This document shows, one piece after another, positions 14,064 to 52,656 of a stretch of DNA of 64,000 nucleotides (positions within the stretch are counted from its first letter, which is position 1; each line of letters begins with the position of its first letter). The position numbers were made by a program, and so were the translations under genes. Source of the DNA: Mytilus californianus (Eukaryota); NCBI RefSeq assembly GCF_021869535.1, contig NW_026262581.1, positions 92,504,001 through 92,568,000 on the forward strand, given 5' to 3'. The notes under the pieces are model-generated. The model had not been told where the DNA came from. It worked only from the letters and a program-made list of their open reading frames with translations, and made no database searches.

Positions 14064-15281
14064 ATGCCAGCAGGACCTGTTAAACGTAGAATACTTATTT
14101 GTGGCGGTGGTAATGGAGCACACTGTTTATCTGCTCTCGCAGCTTCTCGTGAGAATTTGGACGTCAATGTTTTAACACTGTTTCAAGACGAGGCTGAGAG
14201 ATGGACAAAACTTTTGGAAGACAATGATTTAAAAATCTCTGTGACTTACAACGATGGCAACGAATCAGAAATTCATTCCAAACCATCGATTATCACAAAA
14301 GATCCTGCAAAAGCCGTGGAAGGAGTTGACATAGTTTTCCTCGTTGTCCCTGCATTCGCTCATGCACAATATTTTACAACTATGACACCTTACCTACAGC
14401 CAAATACGTTAATAGTGGGATTACCAGGTCAGGCAGGATTCGAGTTTCAATGCAGGAGTATGTTGGGCAAAAAGGCAAGTACCTGCACTATTGCGTCGCT
14501 TGAATCCTTACCATGGGCATGCCGAATATTAGAGTTTGGAAAGCATGTACAAATTCTTGGTTTTAAGGAATCACTAGGAATGTCCTTTTTAACTGGTAGC
14601 GAATGTAATCTTTCATTTCCAGTCGTAGAAACAGTTCAGGAAATTCTTGGAGAAAAGCCAAAAATTCAAGTTATTCAAAATTATATAGCAGTTAATTTAA
14701 TGGCAAAATCTATTATTCACCCGCCATTGTTATACGGTAAATGGGGAGACTGGGACGGAACCCCAGTACCCGAAAAACCTTTATTTTATCAAGGTGTTGA
14801 CGACAGGCAGGCAGAACTATTGTCGAAAGTCAGTGACGAAGTACTAGCAACTGCAAAAGAACTTGAGAAATTAAGGAACAGATGTGATATGTCAGAAGTA
14901 ATTCACATCTTTGATTGGTACAAAATTTATTATAAAGATCAGGTTTCGGACAAAAGTTCTTTAATGATGGCAATGCGAACAAATAAAGCATATGATGGAC
15001 TTGTACACCCAATGACTTCTACTGAGGATGGGAAATTTGTTCCCGATTTTACTTACCGTTATACATCAGAAGATGTACCATTTGGTCTTGTAGTAATGAA
15101 GGGGATTGCTGAAATTGCAGGAGTTGAAACACCAACAATTGACACAATCATTGCATGGGCACAGAAAAAGCTTGACAAAGAATACATTGTTGGTTCGGAA
15201 CTTACTGGGAAAGATATCGCTTCTGCAAGAGCTCCTCAATCCTATGGCTTGCATACTATAGATGAACTTTTTAACATGTAA
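14064..15281 (+). CDS. odh: Opine dehydrogenase paralogue 1 (octopine/tauropine/strombine family), 405 aa, single coding exon
   Basis: CGGGNGAH Rossmann motif, VPAFAH, LPGQAGFEFQ, ESLPWACR, MAKSIIHPP (catalytic His), PLFYQG, DWYKIYY, YRYTSEDVP (Arg/Asp). Acceptor TTTCAG ends at 14052, so the likely start is ATG 14064 rather than the ORF-track start at 13980. Amino-acid substrate not determined. Confidence 0.95.
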   Translation: MPAGPVKRRILICGGGNGAHCLSALAASRENLDVNVLTLFQDEAERWTKLLEDNDLKISVTYNDGNESEIHSKPSIITKDPAKAVEGVDIVFLVVPAFAHAQYFTTMTPYLQPNTLIVGLPGQAGFEFQCRSMLGKKASTCTIASLESLPWACRILEFGKHVQILGFKESLGMSFLTGSECNLSFPVVETVQEILGEKPKIQVIQNYIAVNLMAKSIIHPPLLYGKWGDWDGTPVPEKPLFYQGVDDRQAELLSKVSDEVLATAKELEKLRNRCDMSEVIHIFDWYKIYYKDQVSDKSSLMMAMRTNKAYDGLVHPMTSTEDGKFVPDFTYRYTSEDVPFGLVVMKGIAEIAGVETPTIDTIIAWAQKKLDKEYIVGSELTGKDIASARAPQSYGLHTIDELFNM

Positions 15282-15427
15282 TGTTGTTAAAATTAATTCC
15301 TTTTTCAGGATATGTTTGAGCTCAGGAAAATGCTTTCTCTATGTCTATTTAAAGGCAAATGCCTAAATAAAATTTCTTAAGTTATTTTCATATTTGTATG
15401 GAATCCTATCACAATCAAAGTCTTCCA

Positions 15428-15687
15428 TGGGCCTTGGTGTCCGAGTCGTCTAAGTAGTTCAACTATGGTATCACTAGCCTGTAAAACACTGAGGCTTTGA
15501 TTTCGAACTCCGCACGCGGCAGGTTTGTTAGACCCCAATCTTAATTGACGAAGATGGTCAGATTTCTTGCCGAAGGTCGGTGGTTCTCTCTGGGCAATCC
15601 GGCTTCCTCCACCAATAAAAACTGACCGCCAAGATATAGCCAACAGTGCTGAAAGTTGCGTTAAACACCAACTATCAATCACAATCT
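15428..15687 (+). mobile_element. Full-length tRNA-derived V-SINE (RUDI/BivaV-like)
   Basis: Degenerate A box (TGGTGTCCGAGTCG) and B box (GATTTCGAACTC), V-domain GGTCGGTGGTTCTCTCTGGGCAATCCGGCTTCCTCCACCAA, (CAAT)n tail, and a 14-bp TSD ATCAAAGTCTTCCA at 15414-15427 and 15688-15701. Confidence 0.85.
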
Positions 15688-18600
15688 ATCAAAGTCTTCC
15701 AGAACTACTATAGATCCATAATCGAAACCCTTGTTCAATGGAGCATCATCCGAAATAGTAAGTTAATAGGTTTTCAATCAGAAATGCCTGTAAATAAAAC
15801 AAAAAAAGCATAAACGATATTTACAAAAGCGATAGAAATTTAAAATTTACTGTACTATTGAGAAGTTTATAAGAACAAAATATCTGATAAAAAATTAATA
15901 AATATTAAAAAAAAAAAGACTCCTGACATGTTATCGCCTTTTGTCATGTTAAAAGTGATTGGTCGTTACTCGAATTGCACCAAAAACATACCTCTACACA
16001 ACAAATAATAGAATTACACTGTTAACTTCTTAGAGAGTGAGCTTAAACATTATTCTCTCCGCGTAAATAACATCATCAGAAAGACGACAAGCTAACAAAA
16101 CCTTGATTAACCAGTGTGTTGTGAAGATATTAAAATCAATACCAACATACATGACTTTAAGAAACCTGTTAGGACTGCATTTTCTGATTTCAACTGTAAA
16201 ACTCGTTTAACCCCTACACGTGTTGTGCCTGTACCGAATCATGGACCATGTGTTGTTCGTTCTTGTGTGTGTCTTTGTTTGTATGTCTGGGTTTGGGTTT
16301 TTTTAGGAATTTTGTGTTGGTGGTTGATGTTGTCTGTTGTATTGTTCAGTATTTTCGGCGATTTATTTTATCCTTTTTTATGTATTGTAGCATATCAGCG
16401 ACAACCTCTTGCATATTGTATGTGCTATATGTTATAGGGTTATATAAGATATACCCAAGAAGAGCTTGCATCATGATGTTCATGTTAAAAATAACCCAAA
16501 ATATCTAATCTTTGTTAGAATTGGTTGCCTCGTATAGTAAGAGTTCCACGATTTCCGCACGTTCAAGAACTCTTGCAACAACTTTTTGATGGCTTGTAGC
16601 AAGGCAAAATGTCTGTGTCTTTTTTAATTGGAAGTTAGATTGTCCGCAATACATACCGGTCGATTAATTGTTAATTCGTTTTCGTCCTCAACATGCATGT
16701 AATATTTGCCGTTGGAAACGATCACGTAACAGTCAATAAAGAAATGGCAAACTGTTAAAAATATCAATATATGTGCCACAAATGACCATGGATGGGTTCC
16801 AATTAACGTAAACAAATCGCGCTACTAAAACAAATGAAAACTTGAGGGTTTATATGAGTAAAAAGGACCTAAATAGAATAGATAAATCCAGCTGAGGTCA
16901 ACTTTGCCTTTTTTAAGCTTCTTAAAATATTATTCGGAAAATTATTGGTCTTTTAGAAATATTTTGATCGAGAGATTGCTTTTAAATAAAATGTGTACAA
17001 GAAAACTACGCATGCCTTTTTCCAAAGCTCATATTAAACATCGGGTTACATTTAGAGTAAATTTTCTGTATTGTCAGATATGCAAAATTAAAAGAGGGAG
17101 TGTCGACACGTTAATCAAAACAGCATATTTCGACCAATTTGTATATTCGTTTTGCTTCTTCCAATCATATTTGTTTCTTAATATTAAGCACACGCACATA
17201 ATTTTACAAACGCGCAGATCAAGTATAATATGTGATGATCTGTGTCAAGATGACGCATATTGCAGATATAAAGCGCTATATTGTTTCCGCTTGAAGTCGG
17301 TAGCTTTGACAGCGGTATCAGTCGTACATCTTTTCCCAAAATACTGTAATCCCGTCACATGTTGATGAGCCTGTCTAAAGCCAAGAGTCTCGTCAGTGGT
17401 TGCCTTTTGTTAAATCATATTGTATTCAGCGCAACAGGACATCAAGCAACCAACAATTTACAAATCAAAGTTCTGAGTTAGAAAATTATTTAGTTTTTCA
17501 ACGCTATCACCCAAATATTTTTTTTCGAAATTAGCACTATTATATACGGTATTCGGAAAATCAGGAATCAGAACATAATTTTGTCATCTGCTTGATCACA
17601 ATATATTTTTTCTCATAAAATTGGGGATCAGAAATTTTTTTTAGGAAAAAACAATAACCCCCCTTTTGAAGTTAAATGGTCAATCCCTTAGTGTACTGAT
17701 ATGAATAGTAATACACGGGAATTGTTTGAAAAATATATATAGTTATTGATGCCAACGTAAATATTTTAATAAAAAAGACAGGAAATATGTCGGTGGAACA
17801 AAAAGTTCAAATCCAATTAAAATTTAAAGTGCCCTATAGCTCTGCTGGGGGCAAAGTCGTACAACCTTTAAAAGGTAGACATCTAGATTAGAGTTATCAT
17901 TTGTCTTGTTTCTGTTACGTAAAATGTTCAAAGAGAAGTAACTCAAACAGACACCTGTATATTCTTATTGCAGTTTTACAAAAAGACACACTTGAAAGTT
18001 TCGGGGAATCTGACAGATGATTACATAACAAATACGATCACCATTAAAAGTTATTTTTAAGTGATGATTAGGGGGCAATATTCGTTTATCTTATTTTTAG
18101 ATACATATGTAGAATTGTCTTATTATCAAAAGTTAAGAATCTGGCATTCAAAATAATCTTTCTGAATTACAGAAAAAGTCCAATTTGAAGGATAATGAAG
18201 TTAAAACGAAATAGCACATAATTATTTTGCAAACTGTCACTGATGAAAACCGTTGATAAGTCAATAAACATTGATATCTGACAAACAATGTTCACAACCT
18301 TGGTGTCCGAAAGGAACAGCTAGTCTGATATCTGATATATCGACACTTTGGCTGCTTGGTCATAGAAACAGGAGTTATACTGATTACTGTAAAGTGGTTT
18401 ATTTTCGCGGTGTATATATTTCAGTTCGCCGGGTTAAATTTTCGGCGTTTTCTTGTCCCGGGTTCGGGTCTATCAGTATCTCACTTTCTGCACAAGCAAG
18501 AAATTACACGCGGTATCGTGCTTAGTATACCCCACCACGTAATTCGACGTATCGGAAAACTGATAGTGGCTGTCTGACAGATCCTAGATCTAGTAGAAGC

Positions 18601-19964
18601 GCTCAAACGTCAAGCTGCAGACCAATATATGACGTCATTCATTCTGTTAAGCAATACATGAGAAAAGTGGAACAACAATATGTGTTTTCATTAAAAATAT
18701 TGAAAACCAAAGTATCGGCAAACATGAAGTAGATGTCTGACATTTTGCTTCTTGGTGTGACTAGCTGATGATTTACGACTTTACATACAGAAAAACACAA
18801 TACCTGACTAATTTAGTCATGGCAAATGACGAATCAAAGCAGCAATTAATAAAGAGGCGGAAGATACCAAGGGGATATGTCAAAAAAAACGAAAGACGAC
18901 AAAAAGACAAACAGATACACACACACACATAATTTTATTAACCATTACCCCATGAAGGGCAGATTAATTAAAATGTAATTATTCATAACATAATAAACAA
19001 ACTAAACAATAATGGTTTATTAGAGTAATAATTGTATTGATTGTATGAAATAAAAACACTTTTAACTCAATCTGAAAAAATAGAGAAAGAAAAATAATGT
19101 CAACATTTATGTATAATATATTTCTTTCTTTTATATTGAGGATATCCAGCTAGATTTGGACAAAGAGAGACAACTCCATTCTTCTTATATTTCATATGTG
19201 GGTTTTAGTTCACATATGATATTTGATACAACTTTTAAAACATAACTTTCTTAATTCATTAGTCATTAACCATAAAAATTTATTCTCTATTATATATATA
19301 TTATACACGAAAGGATAATGACCTGATACAACAGTTCTTATTCAATTTAAGTTCAGCAGATCTGACAATACAAAATTAGAGATGTACTGGTCATTATATT
19401 AGAATACTGAATGGAACTTCTGCGTGTCGAAGCGTTTACTTGTGATAAATGCAACAAAAAATAAAACGAAGGTATGATTCAGTCCACTTTGTTTGCCCCC
19501 TAAAATGAGAAAATCAAAAAGTATAATAAATATACCAAATAACACCCCTCTGATGTTCCATAAAGTAAATCTGACACATATTGATATTTTTATCCTTATA
19601 TACTTGCTTTAGGACTTCAAACATCTTGCTTTTTTATGCAAAACCGCCAAAATGACCTCATTTTGAGAGCTAGTCCTTCATATTTGAATATGAGCTTAGA
19701 CTTTTCCCAAAAAGATGTCTTATACAAAGATGTTAATGTTATTTGGGGTAAGGTCTTGGATCATACTTAATTTTGCCAAAAAACTACACGTAGAATAGTC
19801 ATTTTAAGTCAAAAAAGTAAATTTCTACATGTTTATAACGCCACAGTGGCATCAAAACTGACATTTTTGTACAATAGTGTAAAGATTTTAATAGGCCTTT
19901 TCCTTTATCAATGAACTAACCTAATTTTGAAAGGATGTAGGATTTTACTATTTTTGTTATTTAA

Positions 19965-20630
19965 AGGGGCATTAGCAACGGGATATAAAAAAAATTGAAA
20001 TATGATTTTTTTTTTTTTGTTCAATCATTAATGAAAATGAAATAGTGAAATAATAGCAGCCAATTTGGTTCAATTTTGTCAAAAAAAGCTAAGAAACATC
20101 GGAGATGAATTATTCACTTGCATAATTTGAATAATTCGACCTCATTGAATCCGTATTCATGTGACCTTCAATTTAACCTCTTAGCTGGAGATGGGTAACG
20201 CATGGATTCAGCTATTAAAAGGAAAAGAATGTCAACATTGAAAGTCAGTGAAACAAGGATGAACCATTTGGTTGACTGATTCGATCCACAAAAATTCATT
20301 CTTATATAGGTAAAAACGATGATAAACATACTTTTTAACCTCCAATATGAAATCAAACAGACCCAGAAAAATCCAATTGCACGTGGCCGCTATTTAATTA
20401 TTATATTTATGTTTATATCGGGTTATATGACCGTCGGCAGTCTTCGGAGGTCATCTCGATGGTCAATTAGATGACGTCTAGACAAAAATACACACGAAAT
20501 GTTGATACATATTATCGAGTCCATGCATTGTTAATTGTTTATTTTCGACTTTTTGTAATTTGGATGTTATAAATCAAATATGAGAATTTGAGTCAAATCG
20601 GTGAACATGAATTTGACAGCTAATGCCCCT
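19965..20630. mobile_element. Kolobok-type MITE
   Basis: TIR AGGGGCATTAGC/GCTAATGCCCCT with TTAA on both sides (19961-19964 and 20631-20634). Confidence 0.8.
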
Positions 20631-23594: not shown

Positions 23595-23720
23595 TTTTTG
23601 TCTCGCCTCGACGTGGTCACGAAGGCCACTGCATGCTGTTTCCAGCTGCGGCGGCGGCCTCGTCAACAATGTAATATTTTGTGATTAGGTCAGTTAAAGC
23701 GGAGCCTCTAGTGGTATATC
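23595..23720 (+). mobile_element. Short HINE-like remnant
   Basis: TTTTTGTCTCGCCT start, (GGC)n tract and GGAGCCTCTAGT end resemble HINE termini. Confidence 0.4.
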
Positions 23721-24203: not shown

Positions 24204-24613
24204 GTCCGTTCAAAATGAACCACTCGTGGCCAGTCAATGATACATAATTTTATCTATGTCTCAACAGTTTATCTAAATGATCTGAATAGAAATATCGGAT
24301 GTATGCTTAATACATATAAAAGTAGATTTATTAACAAGTAGTTTTAGGCTTGTAAAAAGATGTTAGCTTTTATGCATCGTTAAACGCCATAGAAAACGAG
24401 ATATATAAAAAGTTATGAAACATATTAAATACGACAAAAAATTGCACAAATAACAAAATCGTCCACGAAGGAAAACAATATCAACAACATTTTGTTAGAT
24501 AGCATCCTTTAGTTCTTTAGTTCAGCCATAACATATAGTAAAAACAGTTGATTAAATAAATGTTCACTAAGCATTCCTTTTTTATTTTTCTAGGTTCTTC
24601 AGCATTATACAAC

Positions 24614-25819
24614 ATGTCTGAAAAACGACGAATACTTGTGTGTGGCGGTGGAAATGGAGCACATTGTTTGTCTGCACTCGCAGCTTCTCGGGACAATTTA
24701 GACGTACATGTTCTGACATTATTCCAAGACGAGGCGGAGAGATGGGCTAAACATGTTGAAAATGAAAATATGAAGTTAACAATAACCAAACAAGATGGAA
24801 CTCAATATGAAATATTTTCGAAACCTTCACTTATAACAAAAGATGCTGCTAAGGCCATGTTTGGGGTACAGATTATTTTTCTTGTAGTTCCAGCATTTGC
24901 TCACGCTCAGTATTTTTCCGCCATTGCGCCACACTTACAGCCAAATACACTAATTGTTGGACTCCCTGGTCAAGCTGGATTTGAACTTCAATGCCGTCAC
25001 ATAATTGGTGACAAAGCAAGCAGTTGTACAATCGCAGCATCAGAATCTTTACCATTTGCATGCCGAATTGTTGAATTTGGGAGACATGCCCGGATACTCG
25101 GACTGAAAGATTCCCTTGGCATGTCATCTTTAAAGGGTAAAGCATGTCAACTATCCTTTCCTGTGGTAGAAACAATTCAAGGAATTCTTGGAGAATACCC
25201 TAAATTAGAGCTACTCAAGAACTATGTTGCAATAAATCTGATGGCGGATGCTAATGTTCATCCTCCAATGATGTACGGAAGATGGGGAAACTGGGACGAG
25301 AAACCATTGAAGGAGGAACCCTTATTTTACCAAGGTGTCGATGAAAGACAAGCAGATCTTCTATCAAGGGTCAGTGAAGAATTGCTTGCAACTGCAAAAG
25401 CAATCGAACAAAAAAGAAAAGACGTTGACATGTCAGAGGTTATCCATTTGTTCGATTGGTTTAAAATTCATTATCCAGATCAGATAACTGACAAAAGTTC
25501 CCTAATGATGGCCATGAGAACGAATAAAGCATATGACGGTCTGGTACATCCAATGACAAAAACTGATGAGGGTTATGTCCCAAATTTCAACTATCGGTAC
25601 ACATCTGAAGACGTACCTTTTGGAATGGTAGTTATGAAAGGAATTGCCGATCTAGCGGGTGTATCTACCCCAACCATGGATGAAATACTTGCATGGGGAC
25701 AACAGAAACTAGGAAAAGAATATATAGTTGGTTCAAAACTTACAGGAAAAGATATAGGATCAGCGAGGGCACCACAATCATTCGGAATGACCAGTGTAGA
25801 TGAACTTTTTGATATTTGA
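24614..25819 (+). CDS. odh: Opine dehydrogenase paralogue 2, 401 aa, single coding exon, divergent substrate pocket
   Basis: CGGGNGAH, LPGQAGFELQ, ASESLPFACR, MADANVHPP, DWFKIHY, YRYTSEDVP. Acceptor TTTCTAG ends at 24593; likely start is ATG 24614. Confidence 0.95.
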   Translation: MSEKRRILVCGGGNGAHCLSALAASRDNLDVHVLTLFQDEAERWAKHVENENMKLTITKQDGTQYEIFSKPSLITKDAAKAMFGVQIIFLVVPAFAHAQYFSAIAPHLQPNTLIVGLPGQAGFELQCRHIIGDKASSCTIAASESLPFACRIVEFGRHARILGLKDSLGMSSLKGKACQLSFPVVETIQGILGEYPKLELLKNYVAINLMADANVHPPMMYGRWGNWDEKPLKEEPLFYQGVDERQADLLSRVSEELLATAKAIEQKRKDVDMSEVIHLFDWFKIHYPDQITDKSSLMMAMRTNKAYDGLVHPMTKTDEGYVPNFNYRYTSEDVPFGMVVMKGIADLAGVSTPTMDEILAWGQQKLGKEYIVGSKLTGKDIGSARAPQSFGMTSVDELFDI

Positions 25820-32270: not shown

Positions 32271-32415
32271 TCATGATATACATCAAGAGTTTGGCACTGC
32301 ATCATACACATTCTTTACGCCAGTAAGATTGTAGATTTTCAATGAATTCTAAAAATAAACTTTGTTATAATGAAAATTAAGCTCTAAATGGCTAAACTTA
32401 CTAAGAAATAAGATA

Positions 32416-33652
32416 GGAGCAAGATGAGTTGTGAGATATTCGTCAATGATATAGCAACCAAACGACACAGAAGTAAGATGAGTTGTGGTGTACATCAATG
32501 ATACAGCAACCAAACGACACAGGAGTAAGATAAGTTGTGGTGTATACACCAATGATACAGCAACCAAACGACACAGGAGTAAGATGAGTTGTGGTGTAAA
32601 CATCAATGAAACAGCAAACAAACGACACAGGAGTAAGATGAGTTGTGGTGTATACATCAATGATACAGCAACCAAACGACACAGGAGTAAGATGAGTTGT
32701 GGTGTATACATCAATGATACAACAACCAAACGACACAGGAGTAAGATGAGTTGTGGTGTATACATCAATGATACAACAACCAAACGACACAGGAGTAAGA
32801 TGAGTTGTGGTGTATACATCAATGATACAACAACCAAACGACACGGGAGTAAGATGAGTTGTGGTGTATACATCAACGAAACAGCAACAAAACGACACGG
32901 GAGTAAGATGAGTTGTGGTGTATACATCAATGATACAACAACCAAACGACACAGGAGAAAGATGAGTTGTGGTGTATGCATCAATGATACAGCAACCAAA
33001 CGACACAGGAGTAAGATGAGTTGTGGTGTATGCATCAATGAAACAGCAACAAAACGACACAGGAGTAATATGGGTTGTGGTGTATACATCAATGATACAA
33101 CAACCAAACGACACAGGAGTAAGATGAGTTGTGGTGTTTACATCAATGAAACAGCAACAAAACGACACAGGAGTAAGATGAGTTGTGGTGTATACATCAA
33201 TGATACAACAACCAAACGACACGGGAGTAAGATGAGTTGTGGTGTATACATCAATGATACAACAACCAAACGACACGGGAGTAAGATGAGTTGTGGTGTA
33301 TACACCAACGAAACAGCAACAAAACGACACAGGAGTAAGATTAGTTGTGGTGTATACATCAACGATACAACAACCAAACGACTCAGGAGAAAGATGAGTT
33401 GTGGTGTATACATCAATGATACAGCAACCAAACGACACAGGAGTAAGATGAGTTGTGGTGTATACATCAATGATACAACAACCAAACGACACAGGAGTAA
33501 GATGAGTTGTGGTGTATGCATCAATGATACAGCAACCAAACGACACAGGAGAAAGATGAGTTGTGGTGTATACATCAATGATTCAGCAACCAAACGACAC
33601 AGGAATAAGATGAGTTGTGGTGTATACATCAATGATACAGCAACAAAACGAC
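32416..33652. repeat. Minisatellite, 54-bp unit, about 23 copies
   Basis: Unit GAGTAAGATGAGTTGTGGTGTATACATCAATGATACAGCAACCAAACGACACAG. The 54-bp period explains the 18-aa periodic ORFs on both strands. Confidence 0.95.
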
Positions 33653-34227
33653 ACAAACAAACAAAAAAATATCTAGCGGGCAACACAGTCTTTATTTAAA
33701 TATACATTTGATCATGAAGCGTGGAAATTTTTAAAACCCACAAAAATAAGAAAACAACCATTGTTTATACATTTATATACTAGAATTTAGTTTTATTAAA
33801 TATTATTTCAGCTGAAATGTCTATGAAACATTTACCATTGGACGTTAACAAAAAACAAGCCTGCTTCAAATTGTCTCCTTTGATTTGTACATATTTTAGG
33901 CGAGTACAAAATCGTTACAAAACAATAAACTACGTTATAAGTTGACTTATTAGGAACTGCATTCCATCTTATGAAGCGATTCATAAATAATATTTGTGTA
34001 TTGACTTGACATAATATACGGTTGAGGCTTAGAAACTGGGGAAATACGAAGCTTTGTCGATCATTTTGTCCCGTGTTGTGCCGGGCTAGCTTTCAGTTAT
34101 CTAATATTGAGATTATTGATACACAGTAATAGCCCTGATAATTACCGGTAGTGACCACTGTCGCAAAAGAATGACCTCGTATTGTTATGACCGACTCCAT
34201 TTGAGACAAAAAGATGGTTTTCTGCAC

Positions 34228-35308: not shown

Positions 35309-35365
35309 CTTAGGTGTATTTGGCAAAACGTTTCGGATTTTTCGGTCCTCATCCTTTTTTATTCG

Positions 35366-39674: not shown

Positions 39675-41001
39675 TAAGGGAAGCCGTTTTACTATTTATT
39701 CTAACTTCAAGATATCTCATATAATATATAAGATATCTCAGATATCTTATATATTATATGAGATATCTTATATAATTTATAAATATATTTATGTACGGCA
39801 GGCGTATGAATTTTCGAGTATAGGAAGCGGGCTAATTGTAATAACAATAGAGTAAGAAGTTCCGTTAGTATTTAAAGTCGTGCGTGCACGAGAAAAGTTA
39901 TCGACAAGGGCGGAGACCATCTAACCAGTAATACGTAATTGTGTATAGTAAGATTAATCTTCAGTATAACAGTTCGTGCATTATATATGTAGTGTTCATA
40001 TTTTAATAATGCGCTTCTCTTTTGTAGATTGTATGTTATTTGAAATAACTGATGTCATTTGTGGTGAATACTAATGAGGACATTTGTCTTGTTGTGTTTT
40101 ATGTGTATAATAAATTTCGAAGATGGTCACCGCACATGACAGTCTCTATAATGTTTGATACAGAAATAATTTCATTGCAAATATTTGAGACATACGTTTT
40201 ATTTTTTCGTGGTTGGTATTAGGGTGTCATCAGAAAATTAGAAGCCAAGTGTACATAAATGATTTATTTTCGATTGAACAGAGTGAATTAAGAAAATAAG
40301 ATATCTTATATAATTTATAAGATATCTCATATAATTTTTTTTATAAGATATCACATATAATTTTTTTTATTAGATATCTTTTAAACTTTATAAGATAAAT
40401 CATATACTTTATAAGATAAATTATATTCTTTATAAGATATCTTATATACTTTAAAAGATATCTTATATACTTTAGAAGATATCTTATAAACTTACGAAGA
40501 TATCTAATAAAGTATATAAGATAATTCATATAACTTATACGATATGTTATAAAAATTAGATTATATATAAGATATCTTATATATTATATAAGATATCTCA
40601 TATAATATATATGATATCTCATAAAGTAAATAAGATATCTTATAAAGTTTATAAGATATCTTATAAATATTTTTTTATATAAGCTATCTTATATACTTTA
40701 TAAGATATCTCATATATTTTATAAGATATATTATATAGTTTAGAAGATATCTCATATAGTTTATAAGATATCTCATATAATTTATAAGATATCTTATAAA
40801 GAAAAGTATATGAGGTATCTTATGAATTATATTAGTATCTTATAAACTATATAAGATATCTTAAAAACTATATAAGATACCTTATAAAGTATATAAGATA
40901 TCTTATGAACTATTTAAGATATCTTATAAACTATATGAGATATCTTATAAAGTTTATTAGATATCTTGAAGTTAGAATAAATAGTAAAACGGCTTGCTAT
41001 T
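39675..41001. mobile_element. Foldback-like non-autonomous DNA transposon with a 6-bp TSD
   Basis: 37-bp inverted AAGCCGTTTTACTATTTATTCTAACTTCAAGATATCT, subterminal arrays of TAAGATATCTTA, and CACTGC duplicated at 39669-39674 and 41002-41007. Removal restores the LINE frame (NLGTADKLP). Confidence 0.85.
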
Positions 41002-44055: not shown

Positions 44056-44220
44056 CAGAGGCGAATTTAGGGGGGGCAGGGGGCCCGCCCCCCCCCCCCC
44101 CCCATTTTGTGGGAAAAATTTGGTTGATTATATAGGGAATCACTGAAGCATGACTGGAGTGGGCCCCCTCTTAGGCAGTCAGTGGGCCCCCACTTGTGAA
44201 AATTTCTGGATCCGCCACTG
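44056..44220. mobile_element. Short MITE with CAGTGGCGGATCCAG-type TIR
   Basis: Left CAGAGGCGAATTTAG, right CTGGATCCGCCACTG, in a TA/AT context. A related right end lies at 63770-63884. Confidence 0.7.
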
Positions 44221-44221
44221 A

Positions 44222-44370
44222 TATATGTGTAATTCAAGTCTCAGACAGGGTATATACTGTGACATTCCCGTCTTAAGCCTTATATCCCCTTCGCCTTCGG
44301 CTCATGGGATATAAACTCTAAGTCGGGAATGTCACAGTAAATACCCTGTCTGAGACCTGAATAACATATA
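44222..44370. repeat. Long palindrome centred on GCCTTCGGC
   Basis: Arms GTCTCAGACAGGGTAT.TACTGTGACATTCCCG and CGGGAATGTCACAGTA.ATACCCTGTCTGAGAC. Confidence 0.85.
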
Positions 44371-45896
44371 ATATCTTATTTACATTATTTCTCATGTTAT
44401 ATATCATGTGTTGTACACTTGGATTACGCAATATTCAATCTTTCATATGTGCTTTATCCAATAAAGTATTTGAATATTTTAATTTGAAATTGAATTTGAT
44501 AAAAGACTGAGTCAATGGATCAAAGGAACGATATAAGGACATAACCAAAATATGTAAACGAATATTCAACAGAACCTAGCAACTTATGATTACATAAGGG
44601 AAAGAAATTTTTTTAATTTTCCAGTGTTAATTTTTTGTTGTTGTTCTCCATGTGATTTAATTTTAATAGAACTAAAAAAAATAACGAATAAACGGGGTAA
44701 ATTACAGATCAACGCCCCAAATCTCGAAGTGCGCAACTGTTAAAAGATAATTCATTATTTATTTAACATTTAGAAAATAGGAAATAAATTAGAGGTTCGA
44801 GAAGGTTAAAATATCACCCGGATGTATATAAAGACTTGCTCTTCAAACTTGCGCAATACTGAAGTGCGATAATACCTCTCATTAAGTGAAGTAAGTATTT
44901 ACTGTATATTTTGTAATTGATATGATATATAATCTATTAATTTGTACACAGTGTATATTTTTTAAACAAGAAATGCCATTTGATATGTTTTTATAGTTTA
45001 GTCCATTTAAACCAAGGCATATACACACCTTATAAAATATTTTTCATAAGGGAGAGAAAACAATGAGAATTTTAAATATCCTACTATATGATTGTGTTTT
45101 GATGTGTGTATTCATTCGATGGTGTCTATTGTGCTATAGTTTTGTAGCAGAACAATGTCGGTTATTAATTTGCCACTGGACGTTGAGCAAACAACGATTA
45201 ATCAATTAATCGGTTATCGTATTGATCACTAGAAATGGGAATCGACTATTCTATAGACATGTTATTGAAATTGTATCTACACAGAAACTTCTGAATAATA
45301 TATTAGACAAATATTCACAGTTCTATTTGGGTATATATAGAAATTGATTTTACAAACATGTTAAGGGTCGGCTGGAAGTATTTTTTATATCTTTCCTGTT
45401 TTTTCCCCCGACGTATTTTTAGATTTTTATTTAATTTATCAGAAATTGAAAAAGTTTTATGATTGTTAACAGGGACAGTCTATACTAATATAGACTGTCC
45501 CTGTTGTTAAACGACACTTTGGAAAACTTCTAGCAATCGATAGTAATCATATTTCGGCGTACATTTACAAAAATCTGTGGGATATATTACTAACCAGACG
45601 GAAATGTACTAAAGTTACGGAAATTGTGAACAATTTTAGTTCCTTGAAAACAATGTGTATGTTCATAACTGATAACACATTGATTTATTGAGGCATATTG
45701 TTGGTTTACACTGAAACGCACATATTGATTGATAATCAACTTCTGAAGATTATTGAATCACTTACACTGTTCTACTGCAGTAATAGTCCATTAGTAAGAA
45801 TAATTTAAAATGTGGAAATTGTGATATACACCTCATGAAAGTCTACAAATGAGTATTTTTGTCAACCAGTTGCATAATGAGTGTAGATGTTAGAAG

Positions 45897-46003
45897 AGAA
45901 CCGAAAGATACCAAAGGGACATTCAAACTCACAAGTCGAAAATAAACTGGCAACGCCATGGCTAAAAAAGAAACAGACCAACAGACAAACAACAGCACAC
46001 AAA
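45897..46003 (-). mobile_element. Short retroelement-end fragment; homologous copies near 4060-4152 and 18850-18915
   Basis: GAAAGATACCAAAGGGACATTCAAACTC..AAGTCGAAAATAAACTG.CAACGCCATGGC is the reverse complement of 4112-4150. Confidence 0.6.
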
Positions 46004-46918
46004 AGTAATATGATTAATAATTACCATTTACTTCCTTACTTCGGAAGATAATTTGTATGCATTTTACAATAGATTACAATAGAGATGTGTCTCCCTTATC
46101 GTGTTATAGTGCGCTCTATAGAATTTATATCTCACTCGGTAAGGGTCTGTATGAAAAAAATCATTTATGAATTTCAAAATACTTTCATATTCTATATATG
46201 AAGGATATAAAAGAAATCATATATATATGCTTTTGACCATAGAATCAAATGTTGCGGCATTCTTAAATGGTTCAGTACTTAACTTATAATAACTTCCGTT
46301 TCTCATTTAATGATTGGCCTTTTTATATTAGTGTAATAAACAGAAGTATTATATTTTTACGGTGAAATTTACAGAACTTATTATCTAATCTAAGTCATTG
46401 ACAATCTTCAAATTAAGCATATTCTCATATTCCCCCCTCCCCGGGCCTCACTATTTTCAATATTTTTTTTTATCCAGGTGGTTCTTTAACTTCAACTACC
46501 AACAAAGCAAACTGTTTTGTGGTTTTATCCTTGCCAAGTCGACATACATGTGATGTATATTTAATTTCTTTTAGGTATGAAAATTTCTATTTAATAAATG
46601 TTTGCACTTAGCTCTTACAGTTCACTTGCATATTACGACTGTTGACATTTTGGAAGCAAAAACGAAAGTAGAATTATTATATTCTCTGTTTAAACTGCTT
46701 ATCTATCTTAGACACAATGAATGTCTGACTCTCAGAAATACTGGTTTCAACAGCAGTCACAGTTATTCACCTTCTTCCTTTTTCACACAATTTAATGTAC
46801 TATAAGCTTATCGATTGTTATTTTACATATAATACAGTATTATATGGTTCTGTTATTATCCTGAAAATGTGTTAAATATTCGCAAATTACGTAAATCAAA
46901 AGATATCTTGAGGGCAAC

Positions 46919-47725
46919 ATATAGTTCAACAATAGGCTGATGTCTATATAGTTCAACAATAGGCTGATGTCTATATAGTTCAACAATAGGCTGATGTCTA
47001 TATAGTTCAACAGTAGCTATATAGGCTGATTTCTGTATAGTTCAACAATAGGCTGATGTCTATATAGTTCAACAATAGGCTGATGTCTATATAGTTCAAC
47101 AATAGGCTGATGTCTATATAGTTCAACAATAGGCTGATGTCTATATAGTTCAACAATAGGCTGATGTCTATATAGTTCAACAATAGGCTGATGTCTATAT
47201 AGTTCAACAATAGGCTGATGTCTATATAGTTCAACAATAGGCTGATGTCTATATAGTTCAACAATAGGCTGATGTCTATATAGTTCAACAGTAGCTATAT
47301 AGGCTGATTTCTGTATAGTTCAACAATAGGCTGATGTCTATATAGTTCAACAATAGGCTGATGTCTATATAGTTCAACAATAGGCTGATGTCTATATAGT
47401 TCAACAATAGGCTGATGTCTATATAGTTCAACAATAGGCTGATGTCTATATAGTTCAACAATAGGCTGATGTCTATATAGTTCAACAATAGGCTGATGTC
47501 TATATAGTTCAACAATAGGCTGATGTCTATATAGTTCAACAATAGGCTGATGTCTATATAGTTCAACAGTAGCTATATAGGCTGATTTCTGTATAGTTCA
47601 ACAATAGGCTGATGTCTATATAGTTCAACAATAGGCTGATGTCTATATAGTTCAACAATAGGCTGATGTCTATATAGTTCAACAATAGGCTGATGTCTAT
47701 ATAGTTCAACAATAGGCTGATGTCT
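46919..47725. repeat. Minisatellite, 27-bp unit, with a 278-bp higher-order repeat
   Basis: Unit ATATAGTTCAACAATAGGCTGATGTCT. A 35-bp variant (…CAACAGTAGCTATATAGGCTGATTTCTG) recurs every 278 bp (9x27+35). Confidence 0.95.
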
Positions 47726-49292
47726 AACCAATATGTCAAGCTCTAAATCGTCCCGAGTCTATACATTTGTTAATGATTAAAACAGAAACTACCAAAGATC
47801 TGCCATCAACACCCAATTCTCCAAATAACAAAAATAAAACAACAAAATAAGGACACGGCATTAAACAACCACTGATGCATGAGGTTCCTGAATTGAGACA
47901 GACACATGAATATGCGGGATTCCAGTATTTTCAGTTGTTTTAGGTATTAACCGTCTCACTTTTGATTTCGATCAGCGAAGTAGCAAAAGGTACACATATG
48001 AATGTAAAAGCCGGGTTCTTCAGGCTTTTATTAATAAATAACTGCAACAGTGTGATACCGTTTCAAAAAATTGCTCCAGGTAAAAAGAAGAAACTAAAAC
48101 AATTGAAATCGCTGTCCTACACTTGGTTTTGTGTATGTTATTATGACAACATATTTTGTTAAAATAATAGCATTCAAAGAAGATTCGCTACTCATTCGTT
48201 GATTTCAGTAGAACAAAAAGTAAACGAAAGCATCTTACGATTTGTTATACTGGAAACTACTCGATTGGTAGTAAAATTGTTATTAAAAAAAGTAAGTTAA
48301 TATTCCACTATAATTGTTGGAATTTTATTTTGTGCCATTTTCAATAATTTATGATATCAACGAAAAATTGCCCATTTATGACTAACCTTCGTAAAATTTG
48401 GTTTGTTGATTAGTCTGTTGCGAGTAACACTGACGGAATTTGTTTTCTTGGATATGCATCGGATATTAAGAGGTTTTGTCAAGTACGTGTTAGGCTCCTG
48501 TGAAATTTCAGGTATAAGCCTTTGCATTCTTAGAGCTCTCACAACACCGAAGCAAAATTTGAACCAAATTCAAGAAACCAGCTTAGTTAACTGTAAAGGT
48601 GATCCGAAAAAGTTTCACATTGTATTGTCAATTCTATAATTTAGAAATTTCTTGTAGGTCTGGGCGAGTTGTTAAAATATCACTTACTAAAACATTGGTT
48701 ACCGTGCTAGTTTTCGAGAAAATTGAGGCTGAACATGTCGGACTTTAGCATTTTTGTAAAAAGTAGTTAAGCAAAGTTATAAAATTTTTACAGTAGATAT
48801 TCTTCTCATAAATTAATAAGATTGGACTAATTTTGAAGCTGTTGTAAGTGGAAATAAGGGTAAGCATAAATCTGTATAAGAATGATTGGTTTATAATTTA
48901 AGCTATGCATAGTAGCATATGTAGAATTATAGGGACAGTTGACACCCTAAGCCTTGTTAAATTCCATTCCCGATCAGGATTCAAAATAAAACCAAAAACT
49001 ACTGTTTACTTTTCAATTTACTATGTATTCTACTGTAAATACCAGTTCAGAAGTACTGGCTACTTAGCGGGTGGTGTCTTCGGAAACTGTGTCAACCAGC
49101 AACGGCATATTCATGTTGTCTTTTAGTTTCATTCAGCAATAACAAAATAAAGTGTTTTAAAAAATAAAGCGTTATTCATTTTTTGAATCTGGGCCATTTT
49201 ATCGGACTTTCAATATTTTAAACATAAGAAATAAGAGAGAATCTGTAAAATGACAAAAGTCGACAAAATGGTATTTCTAGCTACTAATCAAT

Positions 49293-49374
49293 CTAATTAA
49301 AATATAGAACTCTGATTTCGTTATCTCTTATGGATTATGGAGATAATGAAATCAGAGTTCTATATTTTAATTAG
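49293..49374. repeat. Near-perfect hairpin, 35-bp stem and 12-nt loop
   Basis: CTAATTAAAATATAGAACTCTGATTTCGTTATCTC pairs with 49340-49374 with a single G-T mismatch. Confidence 0.9.
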
Positions 49375-49445
49375 AGTGAGTTACTCGTCGAACGAAGTTC
49401 TGGATAAACATGAAAACTTTCTCAAATTTTGATATATATATAGAT

Positions 49446-49686
49446 TGTTGATGTGGTTCATAAGTGTTTCTCGTTTCCCGTTTTTTATATAGATTAGACC
49501 GTTAGTTTTCCCGTTTGAATGGTTTTACACTAGTAATTTTTGGGGCCCTTTATAGCTTGCTGTTCGGTGTGAGCCAAGGCTCCGTGTTGAAGACCGTACT
49601 TTGACCTATAATGGTTTACTTTTATAAATTTTGACTTGGATGGAGGGTTGTCTCATTGACACTCATACCACATCTTCTTATATCTA
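49446..49686 (+). mobile_element. 5'-truncated copy of the PLE 3'-terminal repeat
   Basis: Near-identical to 60320-60555; follows a (TA)n tract. Confidence 0.9.
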
Positions 49687-50648
49687 TGTATGTAAATTGA
49701 GAATTGAAAACAAAATCTTAATGTGTATTCACTATGAATAATTATATGTTGAAAACATACATACAGACGAAGGAGGTACTTTAACGAACAAAATAAACGC
49801 CAATAAACATTAAATGGGAATTATTCACCATTTTCTATCTGATTTCATTTTTTATTTGTAATTAGTTTTACCGCTTACCCATTGTGGTTAGTGTTCAATT
49901 GGTTTATATTTAGGGCTCTTAGAAGATGTAGACCTTCTTTTTTCATCATATATGCAAACTTATATGTTTGGTGTAGAAGTTTTAAAGGCTACATGTAGTG
50001 ATTTATTAATGAACTCTGTAATACTAGTAGATAACATATCAGAAAATGAAGCCACCCGGAAAATATCAATTAAAATATAGAAAATGCCCTTCAAGAAAAC
50101 ATTGGGATTGTGTTCCTGAACAAGATGTATTTTGTGAAAGTTTTAATCAAACTATAAATCCTTAGTATTTAAACATGGTTATCCAAGTTAAGAGTTTGAC
50201 TCTCGCCGTTTGAAAGATATTCAATTTTCTCATTTCATGCATTTAAAATTCAGTTTTACAGTTTGACAATTAGGGTCGACCTCCTATTACAGAAATGGAA
50301 ATGTCATCAGTCTTGATTTGCCTTTTTTCGTATTGAATATTTTGATATTTGAAAAATTCGAACTATAAATAACTGCGACAGTTTTGACAGACATTTGCAT
50401 AACAACAAATACATTTTAAGAAACATATTTTTAATCACACTATATGGTTTTAAAATATACTGGCGAAATAACGCAGAAAGTCATACATCCCAAGTTGTTT
50501 GGTTTTAATCATTCACAAGACCCGTAACTTTTATTAAGAATTCGCCTTTCCTTATATACATTTTAGATCATAAAACACAAAATTTGTTTTTATAGGTGTT
50601 TTCACCAAATTTGATAAACAAAAAATCGTAATAGTCTTCAGCGTTATT

Positions 50649-50945
50649 TAAGGAATGACTGTAATATTTTTTCTGTCTATCATGGAAGAAATAACATAAA
50701 AAATATGGTGCACACTGAATAACCGGCGTAGCGGGTTATTTTAAAGTGTGAACCACATTTTTTATGTTATTTCGAATAGACAGAAAAAATATTAAAGACA
50801 TTTCTTATAATTTAATTCTAAAAAGGAGTAAATATGATAAAAACGTTGATGACGTCGCGGTCACATGACAAAATCATGTCTATGAGCTGATAGACAAAAC
50901 ACTTTCAGCAAATCAGAAGACGTGTTACATCCAAAATTAAAGTAT
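50649..50945. mobile_element. Palindromic element (palindrome 50649-50808 centred on GCGTAGC) with a ~140-bp flank
   Basis: Arms ACTGTAATATTTTTTCTGTCTAT..GAAATAACATAAAAAAT.TGGTGCACACT and AGTGTGAACCACATTTTTTATGTTATTTCGAATAGACAGAAAAAATATTA. Confidence 0.75.
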
Positions 50946-51441
50946 TGCCAGATGGAAAATTGAAGATATGTCATTCTCCATTTGACTGATTCTTAGATAG
51001 TATTATACCAAATTTATCATTTTGATGTGAGTTTTTAACTCCTAATAGCTGTAATCATAGTTTTATTGTTTCACTGTATTTGGAATATAAGAGCTTTATG
51101 CTTTCATTATGTGGATAGGTAAAATGTATATAATTCTGAAAATTACATTCGAATTACAATCATTGTTTTCAGTTTGACTCGCAGGAGCCGTGTTTGTTTA
51201 GAGAAAGTTAGTTAACCTTTAATTGTAAACGATCAGATCATCAATTATAATTGTGTCCCAATTGGCTAAGCATTTTATTGAAAGACAACTTACGAAGTTT
51301 ACGACAGGTGAAGACAAACGCCGAATTGGCAATTGCTCATGCTTCTTTTTACCAGATGAGCCAAAAGGAATTCCAAATTTGTTCCAGTTCTGTCAGGTAA
51401 CATTATAATTGTAAAAATTTATTTTCTTACAGGTGTAAATC

Positions 51442-52656
51442 ATGTCTTCGAACACATTAAAACAAAGAATACTTGTCTGTGGGGGAGGAAATGGTGCACA
51501 TTGTTTATCCACGTTAGCTGCCTCACAGAAAAAATCAGAGGTACATGTTCTGACTTTATTTCAAGACGAGGCTGAACGTTGGACAAAACTGTTGGAGGAT
51601 TCCGATGTAAAATTGACAATAACCGATCTAGATGGAAGCCAGCGAGAGCTATTTGCAAAGCCAACCCTGATAACGAAGGATTCAGAAATAGCGATGGCTG
51701 GTGTTCAAATCATTTTCCTTGTCGTTCCAGCTTTCGCTCATGCACAATATTTTACGGCTATAGCACCACACCTTCAACCGAATACACTGATTGTTGGGCT
51801 TCCTGGGCAAGCTGGATTTGAATTTCAATGTAGAAGTATACTAGGTAACAAAGCGAGCACGTGTACTATAGCATCATTAGAATCACTGCCGTGGGCGTGT
51901 CGTATATTAGAATTCGGTAGACACGCTCAAATCCTTGGGGCAAAAGAATCTTTAGGTATATCCTACATTAAAGGAAAGTCGTGTAAATTACCCTTTCCAG
52001 AAGTCGAGTCCATTCAGGAAATTCTTGGTAAAAAACCCATAATTGAAAAAATACAGAACTACATTGCAATCAACTTGATGGCAAAATCTATGGTCCATCC
52101 TCCCATGCTATACGGAAAATGGGGAGACTGGGATGGAAAACCTTTACAGAAAGAACCATTATTTTATCAAGGTATAGATGAAAGACAAGCAGGATTGTTA
52201 TCTAAAGTCAGTGACGAATTGTTAGCTACTGGGAAAATGTTGGAAGAACTCAAAGAAGGCATAGACATGTCACAAGTAATACATATTTTTGATTGGTATA
52301 AAACTTACTATACAGATCAAATAACTGACAAAAGTTGTCTAATGATGGCCATGAGAACGAATAGTGCGTATGATGGACTTGTTCATCCCATGATTAAAAC
52401 TGAAGAGGGCTACATTCCAAATTTCAATCACCGATACACAACCGAGGATATTCCATATGGTCTTGTTGTAATGAAGGGCATTGCTGAAATTGCCGGAGTA
52501 GATACTCCCGTCATGGATGAAATTATTGCATGGGCACAACAAAAACTAGGCCAGGAGTACATCGTGGGATCGAAGCTTTCAGGGAAAGATGTTGACACAG
52601 CCAGAGCACCTCAGTCGTATGGACTAAAAACAGTCGATGAACTTTTTGATACTTAA
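51442..52656 (+). CDS. odh: Opine dehydrogenase paralogue 3, 404 aa, single coding exon
   Basis: CGGGNGAH, LPGQAGFEFQ, ESLPWACR, MAKSMVHPP, DWYKTYY, HRYTTEDIP. Acceptor TTCTTACAG ends at 51432, 9 nt before the ATG. Confidence 0.95.
   Translation: MSSNTLKQRILVCGGGNGAHCLSTLAASQKKSEVHVLTLFQDEAERWTKLLEDSDVKLTITDLDGSQRELFAKPTLITKDSEIAMAGVQIIFLVVPAFAHAQYFTAIAPHLQPNTLIVGLPGQAGFEFQCRSILGNKASTCTIASLESLPWACRILEFGRHAQILGAKESLGISYIKGKSCKLPFPEVESIQEILGKKPIIEKIQNYIAINLMAKSMVHPPMLYGKWGDWDGKPLQKEPLFYQGIDERQAGLLSKVSDELLATGKMLEELKEGIDMSQVIHIFDWYKTYYTDQITDKSCLMMAMRTNSAYDGLVHPMIKTEEGYIPNFNHRYTTEDIPYGLVVMKGIAEIAGVDTPVMDEIIAWAQQKLGQEYIVGSKLSGKDVDTARAPQSYGLKTVDELFDT

What the first reader, a model, noticed from the sequence alone, without database searches (positions are those of the whole stretch)
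14064..52656. Tandem cluster of three intact, well-diverged opine dehydrogenase genes
Seen: three same-strand ORFs of 401-405 aa, roughly 70% identical by eye, all uninterrupted although the surrounding DNA is full of decayed elements, which implies purifying selection on each. Established: opine dehydrogenases condense pyruvate with an amino acid to reoxidise NADH during anaerobiosis in molluscs; the His, Arg and Asp known as catalytic in scallop octopine dehydrogenase (H212, R324, D329, numbering from memory) are present in all three. Inference: a locus encoding a panel of terminal dehydrogenases with different substrates or tissues. None matches the scallop octopine pocket (MSYSFVH).
Basis: partly seen in the sequence, partly recalled or inferred. 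Interest (0 to 1): 0.75.

Follow-up and report, generated by a model that had tools for sequence, protein, structure and literature searches.

The report
Conserved mussel opine dehydrogenase gene trio
Three neighbouring, intact opine dehydrogenase genes in the California mussel genome are real, old, selectively maintained paralogues that are already annotated in public databases, so the locus is ordinary; the middle gene does carry a conserved charge reversal in its substrate pocket.

Summary
Three + strand ORFs (A 14064-15281, 405 aa; B 24614-25819, 401 aa; C 51442-52656, 404 aa) are 70.6-72.6% identical. All hit Pfam Octopine_DH and the solved scallop octopine dehydrogenase (E 6e-127), and all keep His212, Arg324 and Asp329.

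The genome is Mytilus californianus. All three proteins are already in NCBI/UniRef at 100% identity. The A-B-C array has the same order and strand in M. galloprovincialis. Database records point to the same array in M. edulis, M. trossulus and M. coruscus.

Each paralogue has its own orthologue group, reaching a distant mytilid-like genome where synonymous sites are saturated. The triplication is therefore ancient. A careful tree gives (A,(B,C)) with 100/99 support. dN/dS against M. galloprovincialis is 0.105, 0.112 and 0.194, which shows purifying selection on each.

Each catalytic body is one exon preceded by a 5' exon and a long intron.

Functional divergence is supported only in part. B alone has a conserved remodelled pocket (MAKS..H to MADA[NT]VH, Lys208 to Asp). 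RNA-like runs hold C without B, or B and C together. No run showed A, although a close orthologue of A is spliced and transcribed.

Substrates cannot be read from sequence. The scan had separately noted B's pocket (s1-274880).

The parts
3704..3719 (+). Gene A: upstream alternative coding mini-exon (ATG TTT AGC AAA AGA G), followed by a GT donor at 3720
   Evidence: The M. galloprovincialis isoform X1 (P0005, MLSKRV...) starts in the homologous exon at L009:10001. The sequence and the GTATG donor are conserved in the window. Inferred by homology; not shown by M. californianus RNA.
14053..15281 (+). Gene A: single main coding exon (CDS 14064-15281, 405 aa). The acceptor AG is at 14051-14052.
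   Evidence: ORF. Pfam PF02317 at E 8e-33. 100% identical to database protein P0254. 95.3% identical to M. galloprovincialis P0005, with dN/dS 0.105. Transcript-like contig L019 (97.6% nt identity) joins a foreign 5' part exactly at this acceptor.
24594..25819 (+). Gene B: main coding exon (CDS 24614-25819, 401 aa). The predicted acceptor AG is at 24592-24593.
   Evidence: ORF. Pfam at E 6e-31. 100% identical to P0202 and 94.5% identical to M. galloprovincialis 'D-octopine dehydrogenase' AFP55364.1. dN/dS 0.112. Held at 0.92, 0.81 and 0.78 in small RNA-like runs. The acceptor is predicted from sequence only.
44783..44890 (+). Gene C: non-coding 5' exon, with a TATA-like box just inside or upstream. 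The donor GTAAGT is at 44891.
   Evidence: Bases 8-118 of orthologous transcript contig L011 align here at 94.6%; the rest aligns from 51438 onwards.
44891..51432 (+). Gene C: 5' UTR intron (GT...AG, 6,542 nt)
   Evidence: This stretch is skipped in L011. GTAAGT lies at 44891 and TTACAG ends at 51432.
51433..52934 (+). Gene C: main exon (CDS 51442-52656, 404 aa, plus 3' UTR as far as the orthologous transcript aligns)
   Evidence: ORF. Pfam at E 4e-33. 3c7a at E 6e-127. 100% identical to P0156. Held at 1.00 in runs X1-X4 and at 0.97 in X10. dN/dS 0.194.

Best explanation
The locus is an ancient, conserved tandem array of three functional opine dehydrogenase paralogues in Mytilus californianus. 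These are NADH-dependent enzymes that condense pyruvate with an amino acid. All three belong to a mytilid-specific branch of the molluscan OpDH family.

Shown here:
- The array arose by two tandem duplications, branching as (A,(B,C)).
- The duplications predate the split between Mytilus and a mytilid-like lineage so distant that synonymous sites are saturated.
- Every copy has been kept under purifying selection since.
- Each gene has one or more 5' exons, a long intron, and a single exon that encodes the whole catalytic body.

Inferred:
- The copies persist because they have diverged in function.
- A and C keep the widespread Lys208-Ser209 pocket found in enzymes named alanopine dehydrogenase. 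They most likely use small neutral amino acids, giving alanopine or strombine.
- B carries a conserved Lys208 to Asp change, plus changes at 140, 146, 209 and 282 around the amino-acid site. It probably prefers a different, possibly cationic, substrate such as arginine.
- The copies also differ in where or when they are expressed.
For: Identity and family.

Species: a sister locus is 100% identical to an M. californianus RefSeq protein, and the assembly is 1.65 Gb in 175 contigs.

One-to-one orthologues: A matches P0005 at 95.3%, B matches P0007 at 94.5%, and C matches P0001 at 92.3%. More distant counterparts of each are 77-83% identical.

Tree (careful method): the A+B+C clade has support 100/99, B+C 100/99, the A group 100/87, the B group 99/92 and the C group 99/87. 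The sister clade is the C132 paralogue, at 97/94.

Synteny:
- M. galloprovincialis chromosome OZ263145.1 carries A, B and C in the same order and strand within 33 kb.
- M. edulis has consecutive accessions on one contig.
- In M. trossulus all three lie on one chromosome.
- In M. coruscus A and C have consecutive accessions.

Selection: dN/dS is 0.105, 0.112 and 0.194 at dS 0.22-0.35. Between paralogues pS is 0.72-0.81, which is saturated.

Pocket:
- The motifs are conserved within each group.
- Of 23 group-diagnostic sites, 12 are specific to B. They include sites 140, 146, 208, 209 and 282.
- In scallop OcDH, Met206, Ser207 and Tyr208 (backbone) and Glu142 and Trp278 (side chains) hold the arginine side chain (PMC2924402).

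Expression:
- C is held at 1.00 in study P1 runs, whereas B is at 0.00 in two other runs of study P1, one of them (X44) from the same sample (S3) as the C-holding run X3.
- B and C are both held in X10.
- Orthologous spliced transcripts exist for C (L011) and A (L019).
Against: - No substrate was assayed, and OpDH phylogeny is reported not to follow substrate (PMC11084901).
- Glu142 and Trp278, which hold arginine's guanidinium group in the scallop enzyme, are conserved in all three genes. They therefore do not discriminate.
- Gene A's coding exon had zero coverage in one raw RNA-seq run (6% of it read) and in three RNA-like contig sets.
- The 'RNA?' label on most runs is a guess, and the tissues are unknown.
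- The acceptor for B is predicted only. The orthologous contig L010 reads through it colinearly.
- The distant lineage carrying A-like and B-like genes has them 76 kb apart and on opposite strands. The tight array is therefore not universal.
Confidence: 0.85

Rival explanations
1. Dosage or redundancy. The three genes encode enzymes with the same substrate profile and are kept only to raise total opine dehydrogenase capacity.
For: A and C share the same pocket type, MAKS[IM][IV]H, and all catalytic and arginine-site side chains. Only 11 conserved diagnostic sites separate A from C.
Against: - Synonymous sites are saturated between the paralogues, yet each has stayed distinct, with its own orthologue group, across very distant lineages.
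- B has 12 conserved private substitutions clustered near the active site.
- Runs that fully hold C lack B.
Confidence: 0.1
2. Gene A is a silent copy on its way to becoming a pseudogene in M. californianus. Only B and C are working genes.
For: The A coding exon had zero reads or contigs in X21 (raw RNA-seq), X1, X10 and X25. Some of the same runs hold B and/or C.
Against: - The 405-codon frame is intact.
- dN/dS is 0.105 against M. galloprovincialis, and A is 98.5% identical to the M. coruscus protein.
- The upstream exon and its splice sites are conserved.
- A 97.6%-identical transcript-like contig is spliced at exactly A's acceptor.
- Only 6% of X21 was read, and the tool warns that holes in contig sets prove nothing.
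Confidence: 0.08
3. The single-exon bodies reflect a retroposed or horizontally acquired origin of these copies, not ordinary tandem duplication.
For: In all eight OpDH loci of the genome the roughly 400-aa body is one open frame without internal stops.
Against: - The single-exon body is a family-wide trait here, not special to this locus.
- The genes have 5' exons and spliceosomal introns.
- They lie head to tail on one strand, with conserved order across species.
- They nest deep inside molluscan OpDHs.
Confidence: 0.03

Closest known systems
Pecten maximus octopine dehydrogenase (PDB 3c7a/3c7c/3c7d; EC 1.5.1.11)
   Same: The alignment is full length (C: E 6e-127, residues 9-401 against 4-394). 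Shared features are the Rossmann GGGNGAH motif, the His212-Asp329 dyad, the Arg324 NADH sensor, and Glu142, Cys148 and Trp278 (PMC2924402).
   Different: Identity is only about 55%. The three genes lie outside the canonical OcDH clade. The helix-kink-helix pocket MSYSFVH is replaced by MAKSIIH, MADANVH and MAKSMVH.
Molluscan enzymes named alanopine dehydrogenase (Fusitriton oregonensis Q4R1C6; Magallana gigas 'Alanopine dehydrogenase 2')
   Same: The pocket type has Lys208: MTKSIVH and MAKFIVH, against MAKSIIH in A and MAKSMVH in C. The catalytic residues are the same. Identity to C is 52-56%.
   Different: They sit in different clades, gastropod and oyster, not mytilid. B does not share the Lys208-Ser209 pocket. 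The names are database labels, and I did not verify the assays.
Mytilus galloprovincialis 'D-octopine dehydrogenase' AFP55364.1 (UniProt M1FK93)
   Same: It is the orthologue of gene B: 401 aa, 94.5% identical, and in the same 90% cluster. It shares the B-type pocket.
   Different: It comes from another species. I could not find the paper behind the name, so the octopine label may come from similarity alone.
Chlamys farreri OpDH gene family (CfOpDH1-5; PMC11084901)
   Same: It is a multi-copy OpDH family in a bivalve. One adjacent duplicate pair lies on the same chromosome, expression is tissue-specific, and clustering is by taxon, not by substrate.
   Different: It is a scallop family with other paralogue lineages. 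No conserved three-gene array is described.

Membership tests
Opine dehydrogenase family (Pfam PF02317 Octopine_DH; animal OpDH, EC 1.5.1.-) | C-terminal octopine/nopaline dehydrogenase helical domain above Pfam's gathering score | tested here: met
   A scores 114 bits, B 108 bits and C 115 bits against a cut-off of 30.
Opine dehydrogenase family (Pfam PF02317 Octopine_DH; animal OpDH, EC 1.5.1.-) | N-terminal Rossmann GxGxxA/G NAD(H)-binding motif | tested here: met
   CGGGNGAHC is present in all three. The motif is described in PMC11084901.
Opine dehydrogenase family (Pfam PF02317 Octopine_DH; animal OpDH, EC 1.5.1.-) | His-Asp catalytic dyad (His212, Asp329) and Arg324 NADH sensor, in Pecten numbering | tested here: met
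   All are present in A, B and C and in every member of their orthologue groups. Their roles are described in PMC2924402.
Opine dehydrogenase family (Pfam PF02317 Octopine_DH; animal OpDH, EC 1.5.1.-) | NADH-dependent reductive condensation of pyruvate with an amino acid | not testable with these tools
   This needs an enzyme assay.
Canonical octopine dehydrogenase (scallop/cephalopod OcDH lineage) | Placement in the clade that holds scallop OcDH | tested here: not met
   A, B and C fall in a separate mytilid clade. Only the distant locus L008 joins the OcDH clade.
Canonical octopine dehydrogenase (scallop/cephalopod OcDH lineage) | Helix-kink-helix pocket M-S-Y-S-F-V-H (residues 206-212) | tested here: not met
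   The pockets are MAKSIIH, MADANVH and MAKSMVH.
Canonical octopine dehydrogenase (scallop/cephalopod OcDH lineage) | Glu142 and Trp278 side chains that hold the guanidinium group | tested here: met
   Both are present in all three, but also in named alanopine dehydrogenases. They are therefore not diagnostic.
Alanopine/strombine dehydrogenase (by substrate) | Preference for L-alanine or glycine with pyruvate | not testable with these tools
   There is only an indirect hint. A and C share the Lys208 pocket with proteins named AlaDH. Sequence is reported not to predict substrate.

The most novel reading that the evidence does not exclude
In mytilid mussels the orthologue of the canonical octopine dehydrogenase has become a conserved, catalytically altered protein. 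In locus L008 and five relatives, His212 is Arg or Lys, Arg324 is Glu, Ala or Asp, and Gln118 and Glu142 are lost. The well-known mussel octopine dehydrogenase activity would then be supplied by gene B of this array. B would have re-evolved arginine specificity independently, through a Lys208 to Asp charge reversal in the amino-acid pocket. A and C would be the alanopine/strombine enzymes.
Probability: 0.3. Interest if true: 0.5.

Novelty: already known. Interest (0 to 1): 0.27.

Why it matters
Opine dehydrogenases are the terminal enzymes of anaerobic glycolysis in intertidal molluscs. Mussel ODH is also a classic allozyme marker (this last point is from my own knowledge). However, the genes behind the separate octopine, strombine and alanopine activities in Mytilus have not been clearly assigned in the literature I could reach.

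This locus supplies three defined candidates with orthologues across the family. It also gives a specific testable prediction, that B differs in substrate through Lys208 to Asp.

As a genomic feature it is nonetheless an ordinary, already annotated tandem paralogue array of a known enzyme family.

Tried and rejected
- **Exact-protein look-ups.** Searching contig collections for A, B and C found nothing, because records of the window's own genome are withheld. Cluster look-ups later showed 100% matches in NCBI.
- **Other copies in the window.** I looked for extra copies or pseudogene fragments and found none.
- **The 404-aa ORF at 32485-33699 and its antisense partners.** These are artefacts of a 54-bp satellite with 23 copies.
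- **Pfam scan of ten intergenic ORFs.** It gave only a DDE_3 transposase fragment at 61578-61970; the rest were noise.
- **Reads on gene A.** My one read-laying run gave zero coverage of the exon. Only a repeat of about 50 bp at 15580-15631 was covered.
- **Distinguishing arginine-binding residues.** Glu142 and Trp278 are invariant across all paralogues, so I rejected them as discriminators.
- **Literature.** I searched for the origin of the M. galloprovincialis 'octopine dehydrogenase' names and for any description of the array. Nothing was reachable.
- **L019's 5' end.** Its first 137 bases have no match in the window or in the whole assembly. A's usual 5' non-coding exon in M. californianus therefore stays unmapped.
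- **HGT or retrogene reading of the single-exon bodies.** I considered and rejected this (see rival explanations).
Full report
**1. The observation**

- A: 14064-15281, 405 aa
- B: 24614-25819, 401 aa
- C: 51442-52656, 404 aa

They are 70.6%, 71.8% and 72.6% identical pairwise. tblastn finds no further copy or fragment in the 64 kb.

Each matches Pfam PF02317 (Octopine_DH) at 108-115 bits, against a cut-off of 30. C aligns over its whole length with the solved Pecten maximus octopine dehydrogenase 3c7a at E 6e-127.

I carried the Pecten numbering across from that alignment. All three keep His212, Arg324 and Asp329. They also keep Gln118, Glu142, Cys148 and Trp278. The 206-212 pocket reads MAKSIIH in A, MADANVH in B and MAKSMVH in C, not the scallop's MSYSFVH.

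The other long ORFs between the genes, such as 32485-33699, are reading-frame artefacts of a 54-bp satellite with 23 copies.

**2. Whose genome, and is it already annotated?**

A whole-genome search finds eight OpDH loci in a 1.65-Gb, 175-contig assembly. One of them (L006) is 100% identical to the NCBI protein 'opine dehydrogenase-like [Mytilus californianus]'. The genome is therefore the California mussel.

Cluster look-ups show database proteins identical to A, B and C: P0254, P0202 and P0156. They come from NCBI/UniRef/nr and sit on a 142,435,203-bp chromosome. Their names are hidden because they are the window's own. The three genes are thus already annotated.

**3. Gene structure**

A transcript-like Logan contig of the C orthologue (L011) aligns in two blocks. 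Bases 8-118 match window 44783-44893, and bases 121-1606 match 51438-52934.

The sequence fixes a GTAAGT donor at 44891 and a TTACAG acceptor ending at 51432. Gene C therefore has a non-coding 5' exon, a 6.5-kb intron, and one exon that carries the whole CDS.

Gene A has an acceptor at 14051-14052, 11 nt before its ATG. A contig 97.6% identical to A (L019) switches to unrelated 5' sequence exactly there.

The M. galloprovincialis isoform X1 begins in a mini-exon whose homologue is conserved at window 3704-3719, with a GT donor. Gene A therefore spans at least 3.7-15.4 kb.

Gene B has a good polypyrimidine-AG acceptor at 24592-24593, downstream of the longer ORF's ATG. This supports the 401-aa reading, but it is predicted only.

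In all eight OpDH loci of the genome the roughly 400-aa body is a single open frame. The single-exon body is therefore a family trait here, not a sign of retroposition at this locus.

**4. Evolution**

Each paralogue has a one-to-one orthologue in other Mytilus species:
- A matches P0005 (M. galloprovincialis) at 95.3%.
- B matches P0007 at 94.5%.
- C matches P0001 at 92.3%.

Each also has more distant counterparts at 77-83% identity.

A careful maximum-likelihood tree of 104 proteins (quick version) gives these supports:

| Clade | Support |
|---|---|
| A+B+C | 100/99 |
| B+C | 100/99 |
| A group | 100/87 |
| B group | 99/92 |
| C group | 99/87 |
| Sister: C132 paralogue and its M. edulis orthologue | 97/94 |

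Oyster, pearl-oyster, scallop and heterodont sequences lie outside.

In M. galloprovincialis chromosome OZ263145.1 the three coding exons lie in the same order and strand, at about 92,432,502, 92,455,798 and 92,464,410. The intergenic distances differ from the window's.

Other species show the same grouping in database records:
- M. edulis proteins CAG2256034, CAG2256035 and CAG2256036 are consecutive on one contig.
- M. trossulus has all three on one chromosome.
- M. coruscus has A and C as consecutive accessions.

A 243-kb metagenome contig of a distant mytilid-like animal carries an A-like and a B-like gene 76 kb apart on opposite strands. A C-like gene is listed for a contig of the same length. 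I could not name that species.

**5. Selection**

Nei-Gojobori estimates against M. galloprovincialis:

| Gene | dN/dS | dS |
|---|---|---|
| A | 0.105 | 0.215 |
| B | 0.112 | 0.229 |
| C | 0.194 | 0.352 |

Between paralogues, and against the distant lineage, synonymous sites are saturated (pS 0.68-0.81). All three have therefore been under purifying selection for a very long time.

C evolves faster than its neighbours at both kinds of site, and I cannot explain that.

**6. Function**

The chemistry is inferred from the family. NADH binds the Rossmann domain, Arg324 senses its pyrophosphate, the amino acid binds at the helix-kink-helix, and the His212-Asp329 dyad drives condensation with pyruvate (PMC2924402).

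Which amino acid each enzyme uses cannot be read from sequence. Published trees cluster OpDHs by taxon, not by substrate (PMC11084901). The scallop's guanidinium ligands Glu142 and Trp278 are invariant here.

There is still real, conserved divergence. Of 23 sites fixed within each orthologue group but differing among groups, 12 are private to B:
- Ser140 to Ala and Trp146 to Phe, which flank Glu142 and Cys148.
- Lys208 to Asp and Ser209 to Ala, in the segment whose backbone contacts the arginine side chain in the scallop enzyme.
- Tyr282 to His, near Trp278.

A and C keep the Lys208-Ser209 state. So do the C132 paralogue, Haliotis OpDH and the proteins named alanopine dehydrogenase in Fusitriton and Magallana.

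B's M. galloprovincialis orthologue is deposited as 'D-octopine dehydrogenase' (AFP55364.1). I could not find the basis for that name.

My reading, which is inference, is that A and C are alanopine/strombine-type enzymes and that B has a shifted, possibly cationic, substrate preference.

**7. Expression**

Gene C is fully held (share 1.00) in four small, transcriptome-sized runs of the species (X1-X4, study P1). It is held at 0.97 in X10, and at 0.53 in a run recorded as metatranscriptomic RNA.

Gene B is held at 0.92 in X10, 0.81 in X25 and 0.78 in X26. It is at 0.00 in two runs of study P1, one of them from the same sample as a C-holding run.

My single read-laying run, on 12801-16800, used one raw RNA-seq run (6% of it read) and three contig sets. 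It put nothing on A's exon.

This pattern fits expression divergence, with three caveats. Most runs are only guessed to be RNA. The tissues are coded. The tool warns that holes in contig sets prove nothing.

A's function is supported instead by its low dN/dS, its conserved splice sites and the spliced orthologous contig L019.

**8. Verdict**

This is a real, ordinary and already annotated tandem array of a well-known enzyme family. It is conserved across Mytilus and is older than the genus.

- the orthology and dating of the triplication;
- the gene structure;
- the selection estimates;
- the finding that B is the derived copy, which agrees with the scan's separate note s1-274880;
- a side observation, given in the passing notes, that the mussel orthologue of canonical OcDH has lost its catalytic residues.

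Noticed in passing
Outside the window: G000:C1:11066820-11067998 (-), locus L008:1438-2691:-: This is the M. californianus member of the canonical scallop OcDH clade (447 bits to 3c7a). It has His212 to Arg, Arg324 to Glu, Glu142 to Asn, Gln118 to Phe and GGGNG to GSGEG, plus a low-complexity N-terminal extension. The same kinds of loss occur in the M. galloprovincialis orthologue (94% identical) and in four more distant relatives (57-76% identical). It looks like a long-conserved, catalytically altered 'pseudo-OcDH' lineage.
   Followed up: partly
window 51442-52656 compared with 14064-15281 and 24614-25819: Gene C diverges much faster between species than its neighbours. Against M. galloprovincialis, C has dS 0.352 and dN 0.068, whereas A and B have dS about 0.22 and dN about 0.025. 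Against M. coruscus, protein identity is 91.8% for C and 98.5% for A. The cause is unexplained. Possibilities are deep haplotypes, gene conversion or relaxed constraint.
   Followed up: partly
G000:C132:119914942-119919132 (L004) and its M. edulis orthologue P0015: The sister paralogue of the A/B/C clade has no ATG in its open frame before the Rossmann motif. Its M. edulis orthologue carries an extra N-terminal exon that encodes a hydrophobic stretch (…FLAGLVTGAVGVSVIVGL…). This suggests a membrane-anchored or targeted OpDH.
   Followed up: no
G000:C154:8662668-8663855 (-) and C154:18726549-18727736 (+): Two further OpDH copies are 90% identical to each other, lie 10 Mb apart and have dN/dS 0.29. 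They are orthologous to M. galloprovincialis entries named 'octopine dehydrogenase, partial'. Their pocket is MAGSILH, with Glu142 to Asp.
   Followed up: no
window 32415-33655: A 54-bp satellite has 23 copies at 92% match. It creates spurious ORFs of 252-404 aa on both strands. Further satellites lie at 46919-47726 (27/278-bp units) and 40296-40967.
   Followed up: yes
window 55249-57174 (+): An intact 641-aa ORF has an N-terminal B-box zinc finger that is weak in Pfam (E 3e-4, below the gathering score). Its C-terminal part resembles NHL/beta-propeller TRIM-like bivalve proteins by eye.
   Followed up: no
window 58101-59222 (+) and 61578-61970 (-): There is a reverse-transcriptase-like ORF (YLDD motif, no Pfam hit) and a DDE_3 transposase fragment (E 2e-10). 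These are transposon remains downstream of the array.
   Followed up: no
window 15580-15631: A short element of about 50 bp just downstream of gene A is covered at high depth by many short contigs and reads, which continue into unrelated sequence in all four runs. It is probably a highly repeated, transcribed element.
   Followed up: no
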